A stretch of 61,055 bases of DNA, filler included, from Antechinus flavipes (taxonomy: Eukaryota), in assembly GCF_016432865.1 (NCBI RefSeq). It is 4 parts of 3 records of this genome, joined end to end, with 100 filler letters (N's around TTAATTAATTAA, not from the genome) between each part and the next. Parts side by side here need not be neighbours in the genome. Positions count along the whole stretch, not along the records: positions 1 to 12,112 come from NC_067400.1; 3 more parts are not named here. One strand, given 5' to 3'. Position numbers and translations under genes: made by a program. The first letter of the stretch is position 1. Each line of letters opens with the position of its first letter. Positions 1,430 to 3,478 of the stretch are shown here, piece after piece. The notes under the pieces were generated by a model, which saw only the letters and a list, made by a program, of their open reading frames with translations, ran no database searches and was not told where the DNA came from.

Positions 1430-1616
1430 GTGAGGCCCCGGGGCCCTGGGGGGCGGCCCTGGGGGGGCCGGGGCGGAATGAGCAAAGCCCTGGGGGGGTC
1501 CCGGGGGGCGCGAGCTGGGGGTCCGGCGCTTGGAGCCAGGCGGAGGCTGAGGCCGGGGCCTGGTCACGGAGAAGGGGGGGGGGCGCCACACCGACCGTGA
1601 CCCCCTCCCCCGCCAG

Positions 1617-1731
1617 GTATTTCATGAACATCTCCTGGGACAATCGGGACTACTCCTTCAATGAGGACGGCTTCCTGGTGAACCCCTCGCTGGTGGTCAT
1701 CTCCCTGACCAAGGACCGCACCTGGGAGGTG
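1617..1731 (+). CDS. GRIN2D: GluN2D coding exon 3, copy a
   Basis: ccag|G acceptor; [38 protein letters not shown]; GTG|gtgagc donor; 115 nt. Confidence 0.95.
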
Positions 1732-1930
1732 GTGAGCGAAGGGCCGGGGCCTGCAGTGGCAGGGGGGGAGGGGGGCGCCGCGGGGGATGGGGGGGCGGCG
1801 GGGGAGGGGTGTGCGGGGGGATGGGGCGGCGGGGGTGGGGGGATGGGGGGGCGGCGGGGGAGGGGGGCGCCGCCCGGAGGTGGGCCTGGGGCCCAGGGGC
1901 CCGGCGCTGACTCCCCCATTGCCGCCCCAG

Positions 1931-2142
1931 GTGGGGACCTGGGAGCAGCAGGCTCTCCGGCTGAAGTACCCCCTGTGGTCCCGCTACGGCCGCTTCCTGC
2001 AGCCCGTGGACGACACCCAGCACCTCATGGTGGCCACGCTGGAGGAGCGGCCCTTCGTCATCGTGGAGCCGGCCGACCCGCTCAGCGGCACCTGCATCCG
2101 GGACTCGGTGCCCTGCCGGAGCCAGCTCAACCTCACCCACAG
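1931..2142 (+). CDS. GRIN2D: GluN2D coding exon 4, copy a (ATD-LBD linker and start of S1)
   Basis: cag|GTG; [43 protein letters not shown]...RSQLNLTH; AG|gtagga; 212 nt. Confidence 0.95.
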
Positions 2143-2443
2143 GTAGGAGCCGAGCCCTGAGCCCCCGAGCCCCCCCCCCCCCCCCGGGCCCGGGGCGCCT
2201 CCCGTGGCGGGGCTTGTGGGGGCAGAGGGACCGCCCAACCCCCCAGGGCCTCCCCAAGAGTCCCAGCTGGTCCCTGGGCGGAGGAAAGCCTGCGGGGGGG
2301 GGGGGCACAGAATGGGGGGCGCGGCCCTGGCGCCCGGATGCGCTTCAGCTCGGGGAGCCCCAAGGGACGGCCCCAGCGCGGGAGGGAGAGCAGGGCGGGG
2401 CCGGGAGGGGGCGCCACACCGACCGTGACCCCCTCCCCGCCAG

Positions 2444-2558
2444 GTATTTCATGAACATCTCCTGGGACAATCGGGACTACTCCTTCAATGAGGACGGCTT
2501 CCTGGTGAACCCCTCGCTGGTGGTCATCTCCCTGACCAAGGACCGCACCTGGGAGGTG
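2444..2558 (+). CDS. GRIN2D: GluN2D coding exon 3, duplicate copy b
   Basis: Reads identical to 1617-1731 by eye, with the same splice sites; may be an assembly duplicate. Confidence 0.6.
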
Positions 2559-2765
2559 GTGAGCGAAGGGCCGGGGCCTGCAGTGGCAGGGGGGGAGGGG
2601 GGCGCCGCGGGGGATGGGGGGGCGGGGCGGGGGAGGGGTGTGCGGGGGGATGGGGCGGCGGGGGAGGGGTGTGCGGGGGGATGGGGCGGCGGGGGAGGGG
2701 GGCGCCGCCCGGAGGTGGGCCTGGGGCCCAGGGGCCCGGCGCTGACTCCCCCATTGCCGCCCCAG

Positions 2766-2977
2766 GTGGGGACCTGGGAGCAGCAGGCTCTCCGGCTGAA
2801 GTACCCCCTGTGGTCCCGCTACGGCCGCTTCCTGCAGCCCGTGGACGACACCCAGCACCTCATGGTGGCCACGCTGGAGGAGCGGCCCTTCGTCATCGTG
2901 GAGCCGGCCGACCCGCTCAGCGGCACCTGCATCCGGGACTCGGTGCCCTGCCGGAGCCAGCTCAACCTCACCCACAG
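2766..2977 (+). CDS. GRIN2D: GluN2D coding exon 4, duplicate copy b
   Basis: Reads identical to 1931-2142 by eye, with the same splice sites; may be an assembly duplicate. Confidence 0.6.
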
Positions 2978-3478
2978 GTAGGAGCCGAGCCCTGAGCCCC
3001 CGAGCCCCCCCCCCCGGGCCCGGGCGCCTCCCGTGGCGGGGCTTGTGGGGGCAGAGGGACCGCCCAACCCCCCAGGGCCTCCCCAAGAGTCCCAGCTGGT
3101 CCCTGGGCGGAGGAAAGCCTGCGGGGGGGGCACAGAATGGGGGGCGCGGCCCTGGCGCCCGGATGCGCTTCAGCTCGGGGAGCCCCAAGGGACGGCCCCA
3201 GCGCGGGAGGGAGAGCAGGGCGGGGCCGGGAGGGGGCGCCACTCTGGGGACGTCGCAGAGAGCCTTGAGTGCCAGGACAGGAGTCTCCAAGGGGGGCGCT
3301 CTGGGCCTGGAGGGGAGAACTGGGTTCCGATGCTGCTGTGAGCCCGCCCTAGAGCAGGGACGAGCAAATTACTTCGGTCCGAGAGCCCGGTTTCCTTTTC
3401 TAAAACAGGGAGGGGCAGGGATTGGTCTGTGGTGGGACTTTGGGCCGGCCTGGGGACGCTGTGCGGGCGCTGCGCTTG

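What the first reader, a model, noticed from the sequence alone, without database searches (positions are those of the whole stretch)
1579..3242. In-frame tandem duplication of GRIN2D coding exons 3+4 with 11-bp breakpoint microhomology
Seen: two ~0.83-kb copies each carry exon 3 (115 nt) and exon 4 (212 nt) with intact splice sites. GGGGGCGCCAC sits at both ends and at the junction. The pair is 327 nt (109 codons) and enters and exits in phase 2, so including both copies keeps the frame. Known: these exons encode the end of the ATD, the ATD-LBD linker and the start of S1, and human and mouse GRIN2D have one copy. Inference: if real, this is a very recent microhomology-mediated duplication that could yield normal (3a-4a, 3a-4b, 3b-4b) or +109 aa subunits. 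The exons look identical and differences are confined to homopolymers and the G-rich VNTR, so two haplotypes assembled in tandem, or a chimeric read, is at least as likely.
Basis: partly seen in the sequence, partly recalled or inferred. Interest (0 to 1): 0.75.

Follow-up and report, generated by a model that had tools for sequence, protein, structure and literature searches.

The report
Duplicated GRIN2D exons 3-4, reality untested
The assembled sequence does carry a head-to-tail, frame-preserving duplication of two coding exons of the NMDA-receptor gene GRIN2D, joined at an 11-base repeat, but no sequencing reads could be consulted, so a real young duplication and an assembly or library artefact remain about equally likely.

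Summary
GGGGGCGCCAC sits at 1579-1589, 2407-2417 and 3232-3242, bounding two units of 828 and 825 bp. Each unit holds a 115-nt and a 212-nt exon with identical splice sites. The units share 814 matched columns with no substitutions. All 8 differences are indels in homopolymers or in the G-rich repeat array (VNTR) of intron 3.

The gene is GRIN2D: solved human GluN2D chains are the best match by far. Exons 1-7 are intact, and including both copies adds 109 codons with no stop.

An 11-bp junction homology is rare for random breakpoints in this locus (P about 1.3e-4), and there is no N between the copies. That argues against a random haplotype-in-tandem join. It fits either a real microhomology-mediated tandem duplication or a join made at the 11-mer in vitro or in silico.

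The piece looks like a short, fragmentary record, which raises the prior for an artefact.

My odds:
- real, young duplication: about 0.5
- artefact: about 0.42
- fixed and functional duplication: about 0.08

The kind is known and interest is modest.

The parts
1579..1589 (+). Left microhomology arm, GGGGGCGCCAC. It overlaps the 3' end of a G10 run (1574-1583).
1579..2406 (+). Duplication unit A (828 bp)
1617..1731 (+). Coding exon 3a (115 nt). It starts with the last base of a split codon and then encodes YFMNISWD...TWEV, the end of the amino-terminal domain.
1762..1867 (+). G-rich VNTR with a G-quadruplex-type motif in intron 3, copy A form
1931..2142 (+). Coding exon 4a (212 nt; VGTWEQQ...NLTH): the ATD-LBD linker and the start of S1
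2143..2443 (+). Hybrid intron (301 nt) that exists only in the duplicated form. It runs from the exon 4a donor to the exon 3b acceptor and contains the junction.
2407..2417 (+). Junction microhomology arm, GGGGGCGCCAC. A G-quadruplex-type motif (2380-2411) abuts it.
2407..3231 (+). Duplication unit B (825 bp)
2444..2558 (+). Coding exon 3b, identical to 3a
2589..2702 (+). G-rich VNTR in intron 3, copy B form. It has a perfect 31-bp unit x2.4 at 2626-2700 and differs in structure from copy A.
2766..2977 (+). Coding exon 4b, identical to 4a
3232..3242 (+). Right microhomology arm, GGGGGCGCCAC, followed by unique intron 4 sequence
28..486 (+). Coding exon 1 ([20 protein letters not shown]...TPK)
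810..1429 (+). Coding exon 2 (amino-terminal domain)
7689..7857 (+). Coding exon 5 ([22 protein letters not shown]...)
8115..8268 (+). Coding exon 6
9065..9190 (+). Coding exon 7 (start of M1). In the exon table the 3' end was set one base too far, at 9191.

Best explanation
[quoted passage not shown] In the single-copy ancestor, an ~817-bp segment (36 nt of intron 2, exon 3, intron 3, exon 4 and 264 nt of intron 4) was flanked by two copies of GGGGGCGCCAC. A nascent strand ending at the right arm re-annealed at the left arm, by replication slippage or template switching, possibly helped by fork stalling at the adjacent G-rich DNA. The segment was copied again, leaving three arms around two units. 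The copies have since drifted only at hypermutable sites (homopolymers and the VNTR). That implies an age of very roughly hundreds to tens of thousands of generations, and not necessarily fixation. Both exon pairs keep their full splice signals and the new 4a-3b intron is an ordinary 301 nt, so the default transcript should include all four exons. It would encode GluN2D with a 109-residue in-frame insertion (R + exon 3 + exon 4 peptide) at the ATD-LBD linker. Skipping one pair would restore the normal mRNA. Shown here: the anatomy, the frame and the non-random junction. Inferred: that the duplication exists in DNA, how it formed, its age, and how it is spliced.
For: Three copies of the 11-mer bound two head-to-tail units. 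P(microhomology >= 11) is about 1.3e-4 for random breakpoints in this locus. There is no N anywhere in the piece. [quoted passage not shown] The two copies carry structurally different VNTR forms, not just noise, and show 0 substitutions in 814 columns. That is what hypermutable-site drift after a recent event would give. MTD is reported as a common, conserved source of tandem duplications, including polymorphic and de novo human ones, and longer arms are favoured (PMC13167724). G-quadruplex-type motifs abut the right arm and a G10 run overlaps the left arm. All seven coding exons are intact and the nine-exon reading has no stop, so consensus quality is good in the exons.
Against: No read-level evidence could be obtained. 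The duplication sits in a strongly conserved receptor gene, where purifying selection should remove it. The piece appears to be a short, fragmentary record. It starts 27 nt before the ATG and ends inside a minisatellite, with an exact 1063-bp repeat running to its last base. Such places in an assembly are error-prone. Differences confined to homopolymers and a VNTR are equally what two alleles, or polymerase stutter, would show.
Confidence: 0.5

Rival explanations
1. Artefact: the genome has one copy, and the second was created outside the animal by a join at the 11-mer. Possible routes are template switching in an amplified library (an incomplete product ending at the right arm primes at the left arm of another molecule), an overlap-merge or gap-filling step that fused two contig ends through the short shared word, or one aberrant read used as contig backbone. 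The two copies would then represent two templates, for example the two haplotypes, or carry stutter and consensus errors.
For: The differences lie only in homopolymers and the VNTR, with 0 substitutions, as expected of alleles or stutter. The DNA is 73-77% GC and rich in G-quadruplex-type motifs and homopolymers, which is difficult for sequencing. The piece looks like a short isolated record ending in an exact self-repeat. False exon gains are documented in assemblies, including ones connected by wrongly filled sequence instead of a gap (PMC9516828). GRIN2D is conserved, and the human protein has one copy of the exon 2 and exon 4 segments searched.
Against: There is no assembly gap between the copies. 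A random join is very unlikely to show 11 bp of homology, so this needs a specific join-at-homology step. I cannot show that such a step was part of this assembly's history. An 0.83-kb unit is shorter than typical long reads, so most reads would span it and contradict a false copy. The exons are error-free, which suggests a well-supported consensus.
Confidence: 0.42
2. A real duplication that is fixed in the species and used. Either a longer GluN2D with a doubled ATD-LBD linker segment is expressed, or the two exon pairs are used alternatively, and gene conversion keeps the copies identical.
For: The frame is preserved and every splice signal is intact in both copies. The number of indel differences shows that the copies are not brand-new.
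Against: The exons are 100% identical, so alternative use would change nothing in the protein. Nothing enforces mutual exclusion: the 4a-3b intron is 301 nt and skipping causes no frame penalty. There are no substitutions even in the introns, which argues for youth over long maintenance. I know of no such form in GluN2D, and a word search found no report of one.
Confidence: 0.08

Closest known systems
Microhomology-mediated tandem duplication (MTD; PMC8639346, PMC13167724)
   Same: A single-copy segment flanked by short direct repeats is doubled head to tail, leaving three arms around two units. The arm is longer than chance allows. The event is potentially reversible by the same homology.
   Different: The unit here is ~0.83 kb and spans two coding exons. 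The human disease examples quoted in that paper are 8-20 bp. Its existence in DNA is unverified here.
False duplications and false exon gains in genome assemblies (Ko et al. 2022, PMC9516828)
   Same: Near-identical adjacent copies of genic sequence in a GC-rich, repeat-rich place, with copies that differ at sites where alleles or read errors differ.
   Different: There is no assembly gap between the copies, and the junction is at an 11-bp homology instead of an arbitrary point. The diagnostic features (half depth, depth gap, discordant pairs, haplotype k-mers) could not be tested.
Transcribed in-frame intragenic multi-exon tandem duplications, such as KMT2A partial tandem duplication or EGFR kinase-domain duplication (from my own knowledge)
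   Same: Whole exons with their splice sites are duplicated in tandem, the frame is kept, and the default transcript includes both copies.
   Different: Those are somatic cancer events in human genes. This one is in a reference assembly of another species, and no transcript was examined.
Tandem exon duplication giving mutually exclusive alternative exons (Kondrashov and Koonin 2001; Letunic et al. 2002; from my own knowledge)
   Same: Exons are duplicated in tandem inside a gene with the reading frame kept.
   Different: The copies are identical, a two-exon cassette is involved instead of one exon, and no exclusion mechanism is visible.

Membership tests
GRIN2D / GluN2D | The sequence is closer to GluN2D than to GluN2A, GluN2B or GluN2C | tested here: met
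   Exon 2 peptide: GluN2D chains score E = 1.5e-122 against 5.5e-42 for GluN2C and 8e-31 for GluN2B/2A. Exon 4 peptide: GluN2D 8.8e-41 against GluN2C 4.4e-22.
GRIN2D / GluN2D | Colinear intact coding exons with consistent phases | tested here: met
   Exons 1-7 read through without a stop, with one or with two exon 3-4 pairs.
GRIN2D / GluN2D | The duplicated part is the ATD end, the linker and the start of S1 | tested here: met
   Exon 4 aligns to residues 401-470 of chain 7yff_B. The LBD constructs 3oek and 4jwy start at exon 4 residue 27.
Microhomology-mediated tandem duplication | Two head-to-tail units with the same short arm at both ends and at the junction | tested here: met
   The 11-mer is at 1579, 2407 and 3232.
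Microhomology-mediated tandem duplication | Arm longer than expected by chance | tested here: met
   P(>= 11 bp) is about 1.3e-4 in locus-specific sampling of breakpoint pairs.
Microhomology-mediated tandem duplication | The duplicated allele exists in the organism's DNA | not testable with these tools
Microhomology-mediated tandem duplication | A single-copy state in relatives | tested here: inconclusive
   Human GluN2D protein chains match exon 4 in one stretch only. No genome of a close relative was available.
False assembly duplication (Ko et al. 2022 criteria) | Assembly gap between the copies | tested here: not met
   There is no N in 1-12112.
False assembly duplication (Ko et al. 2022 criteria) | Half or lower read depth, a depth gap at the join, discordant pairs, haplotype-specific k-mers | not testable with these tools
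   No reads were available. The criteria are quoted from PMC9516828.
Mutually exclusive tandem exons | Diverged copies that give different proteins | tested here: not met
   3a = 3b and 4a = 4b exactly.
Mutually exclusive tandem exons | A mechanism that forbids joint inclusion (an intron too short to splice, or a frame penalty) | tested here: not met
   The 4a-3b intron is 301 nt, and joint inclusion keeps the frame with no stop.

The most novel reading that the evidence does not exclude
The duplication is real, present in more than this one individual, and transcribed with both exon pairs. This animal would then make a GluN2D subunit with a 109-residue insertion, a second copy of the last ATD segment, the linker and the first S1 segment, at the ATD-LBD hinge that couples modulation to gating. 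That would be a natural experiment on how much this linker can tolerate.
Probability: 0.1. Interest if true: 0.6.

Novelty: new member of a known kind. Interest (0 to 1): 0.33.

Why it matters
If the duplication is real, a strongly conserved NMDA-receptor gene carries a young structural variant that is in frame and competent for splicing. The variant doubles the segment linking the amino-terminal and ligand-binding domains. The amino-terminal domain is reported to contribute to subtype-specific open probability (chimera work summarised in PMC11471786). The variant would be either a tolerated long-linker receptor or a hypomorphic allele in the reference animal. If it is an artefact, gene predictors will turn it into a false 109-residue insertion in this species' GRIN2D model, and it should be flagged. 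In both cases it is a clean example for telling microhomology-flanked duplications from assembly errors.

Tried and rejected
**Steps that gave nothing**
Later work on that range was local only (alignment, counting, repeat finding).
- A word search for GRIN2D with tandem duplication and exon found nothing relevant.
- I skipped the large protein searches.

**The joined spliced model**
- I did not search, fold or print it.
- Exon-wise references were used for the PDB searches.
- One local script joined exons in memory only to count length and stops.

**Readings considered and rejected**
- A random haplotype-in-tandem join: disfavoured and by the absence of N.
- Mutually exclusive exons: the copies are identical and no exclusion mechanism is visible.
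- Pseudogene: all exons are intact.
- Inverted repeats near the breakpoints: only G-run/C-run complementarity turned up, nothing specific to the junction.

Full report
**1. What is in the sequence**

The stretch 1579-3242 is a head-to-tail doublet. The 11-mer GGGGGCGCCAC occurs at 1579-1589, 2407-2417 and 3232-3242.
- Unit A is 1579-2406 (828 bp) and unit B is 2407-3231 (825 bp).
- A global alignment gives 814 matched columns, no substitution, and 8 indel events totalling 25 bp.
- Four events are homopolymer lengths: C5/C4 in the exon 3 polypyrimidine tract, C16/C11, G4/G3 and G12/G8.
- The other four lie in the G-rich VNTR of intron 3. The two copies have different repeat architectures there. 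Copy B has a perfect 31-bp unit x2.4, and copy A has a different arrangement.
- The repeat finder and a self-BLAST report the same pair.

**2. The gene**

Translating the exons by reference gives a colinear GluN2D amino terminus.
- The exon 2 peptide matches human GluN2D chains at E = 1.5e-122, against 5.5e-42 for GluN2C and about 1e-30 for GluN2A/B.
- The exon 4 peptide matches GluN2D residues 401-470 of 7yff_B at about 1e-40, and 65 of 70 residues equal the human ones.
- The isolated ligand-binding-domain constructs 3oek and 4jwy begin at exon 4 residue 27.
- Human chains match exon 4 in one stretch, so the human protein has one copy.
- The sequence is not human, because it differs at many residues.

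**3. Gene structure and frame**

| Exon | Coordinates | Length |
|---|---|---|
| 1 | 28-486 | start codon at 28, in frame with the ATG at 73 |
| 2 | 810-1429 | 620 nt |
| 3a | 1617-1731 | 115 nt |
| 4a | 1931-2142 | 212 nt |
| 3b | 2444-2558 | 115 nt |
| 4b | 2766-2977 | 212 nt |
| 5 | 7689-7857 | 169 nt |
| 6 | 8115-8268 | 154 nt |
| 7 | 9065-9190 | 126 nt |

- 3a = 3b and 4a = 4b exactly, with identical acceptors and donors.
- The unit starts 38 nt upstream of exon 3 (27 nt of that lie after the 11-mer arm). Both copies therefore carry the candidate branch points (CCGAC and GTGAC), the pyrimidine tract and the AG.
- The exon pair is 327 nt and is entered and left with two bases of a split codon.
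- The 4a/3b junction codon is AGG (R). The normal 4/5 junction codon is AGC (S).
- Reading 1-2-3a-4a-3b-4b-5-6-7 gives no stop and 109 more codons than the single-pair reading.
- The mixed forms 3a-3b-4b and 3a-4a-4b shift the frame and hit stops.
- The new 4a-3b intron is 301 nt, comparable to its neighbours (187, 199 and 207 nt).
- This bookkeeping was done in a local script.

**4. Is the junction more than chance?**

I removed copy B and sampled about 0.6 million breakpoint pairs 300-2000 bp apart in the resulting single-copy locus. This keeps the locus's own G-rich composition.
- The fraction with at least 11 bp of junction homology was 1.3e-4.
- Whatever process made the join therefore used the homology.
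- This disfavours the simplest artefact, two haplotigs laid end to end at arbitrary points.
- No N lies between the copies or anywhere in the piece. Ko et al. [quoted passage not shown]

**5. What remains**

Two families of explanation use the homology.

(a) A real microhomology-mediated tandem duplication.
- The class is described as common and conserved. It includes polymorphic and de novo human duplications, and longer arms are favoured (PMC13167724; PMC8639346).
- The right arm is abutted by a G-quadruplex-type motif (2380-2411, repeated at 3205-3236), and the left arm overlaps a G10 run.
- That fits fork stalling followed by re-priming at the upstream arm. This step is inference.
- Zero substitutions with eight changes at hypermutable sites would put the event at hundreds to tens of thousands of generations. 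This is a rough inference from typical mutation rates, not a computation on data.

(b) A join at the 11-mer made in vitro or in silico.
- Possible routes are template switching in an amplified library, an overlap-merge or gap-filling step, or one aberrant read used as backbone.
- The two copies would then come from two templates, for example two alleles. That explains equally well why they differ only at VNTR and homopolymer sites.

**6. Context that raises the prior for an artefact**

- The scan's note says the window was assembled from short pieces, so this piece may be a whole short record.
- It starts 27 nt before the ATG and ends inside a 36-bp minisatellite.
- Its last 1063 bases (11050-12112) are an exact copy of 9393-10455, and the match runs to the final base.
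- The DNA is 73-77% GC over the duplicated region and full of long homopolymers.
- On the other side, all seven exons are free of frame errors. An 0.83-kb unit is also shorter than typical long reads, and a sequence that crosses 2.8 kb of minisatellite must come from long reads. These two points are my inference.

**7. What could not be done**

I used no other tool to reach reads and sent no letters of 500-4600 to any search afterwards.
- Depth, spanning molecules and transcripts, which are the decisive data, are therefore missing.

**8. How it would work if real (inference)**

- Exon definition should recognise all four exons, as happens in transcribed intragenic tandem duplications known from human genes (my own knowledge).
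- The default product would therefore be GluN2D with R + 38 + 70 extra residues.
- The least disruptive fold would use 3a for the ATD and the S1 part of 4b for the LBD. 4a + 3b would be left as a 109-residue insertion in the ATD-LBD linker, with two extra N-x-S/T sequons (NIS and NLT).
- The GluN2 ATD is reported to contribute to subtype-specific open probability (PMC11471786). The outcome would be either altered gating or, more likely, poor folding and ER retention, giving a hypomorphic allele.
- Skipping either pair, or splicing 3a directly to 4b, restores the normal mRNA.

**9. Verdict**

A random tandem mis-join is disfavoured. Whether the duplication exists in DNA is undecided.
- real, young duplication: about 0.50
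- homology-using artefact: about 0.42
- fixed and functional duplication: about 0.08

In every case the kind is known (MTD, or a false exon gain), so the novelty is at most a new member of a known kind.

Noticed in passing
window 9393-10455 and 11050-12112: An exact 1063-bp direct repeat at an offset of 1657 bp lies inside the 36-bp minisatellite of intron 7. The match runs to the last base of the piece, so its true extent is unknown. It is either a very recent higher-order expansion or a repeat loop walked twice by the assembler.
   Followed up: partly
window 9268-12112: A C-rich 36-bp minisatellite (consensus CTGCTCCCCCTTGTGGCCCTTGGTGCCCGTTCCCCG) with 60+ copies and 50-, 86-, 123- and 136-bp higher-order periods starts ~80 nt after exon 7. 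It has a very strong AT skew (-0.9).
   Followed up: no
window 4611-5381: A 29/56-bp minisatellite (GGCTCCCCTGTGAGACTCCCCGTGGTG) of ~24 copies lies in intron 4.
   Followed up: no
window 5692-5765 and 6330-6519, around 5780-6330: Two arrays of a 20/53-bp repeat (CCGATAGTGCTCC...) flank a ~550-bp stretch of much lower GC (0.54 against ~0.7). It looks like an insertion into a pre-existing minisatellite, possibly a transposable element. It was not identified.
   Followed up: no
window 2170-2185 with 2294-2305; 3005-3015 with 3123-3130: The poly-C and poly-G runs in intron 4 are complementary to each other, about 100 nt apart. Both are shorter in copy B (C16/G12 against C11/G8).
   Followed up: no
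window 3478-3580: A 44-bp G-rich repeat of 2.4 copies includes a G19 run (3513-3531). It lies just downstream of the duplication.
   Followed up: no
window 28-75: An in-frame ATG at 28 lies upstream of the ATG at 73 and gives [15 protein letters not shown] before the signal peptide. This resembles the human GluN2D N-terminus as I recall it. The piece begins only 27 nt before this ATG.
   Followed up: partly
window 7896-7993: A 34-39-bp repeat of 2.3-2.7 copies lies in intron 5, directly after the exon 5 donor region.
   Followed up: no
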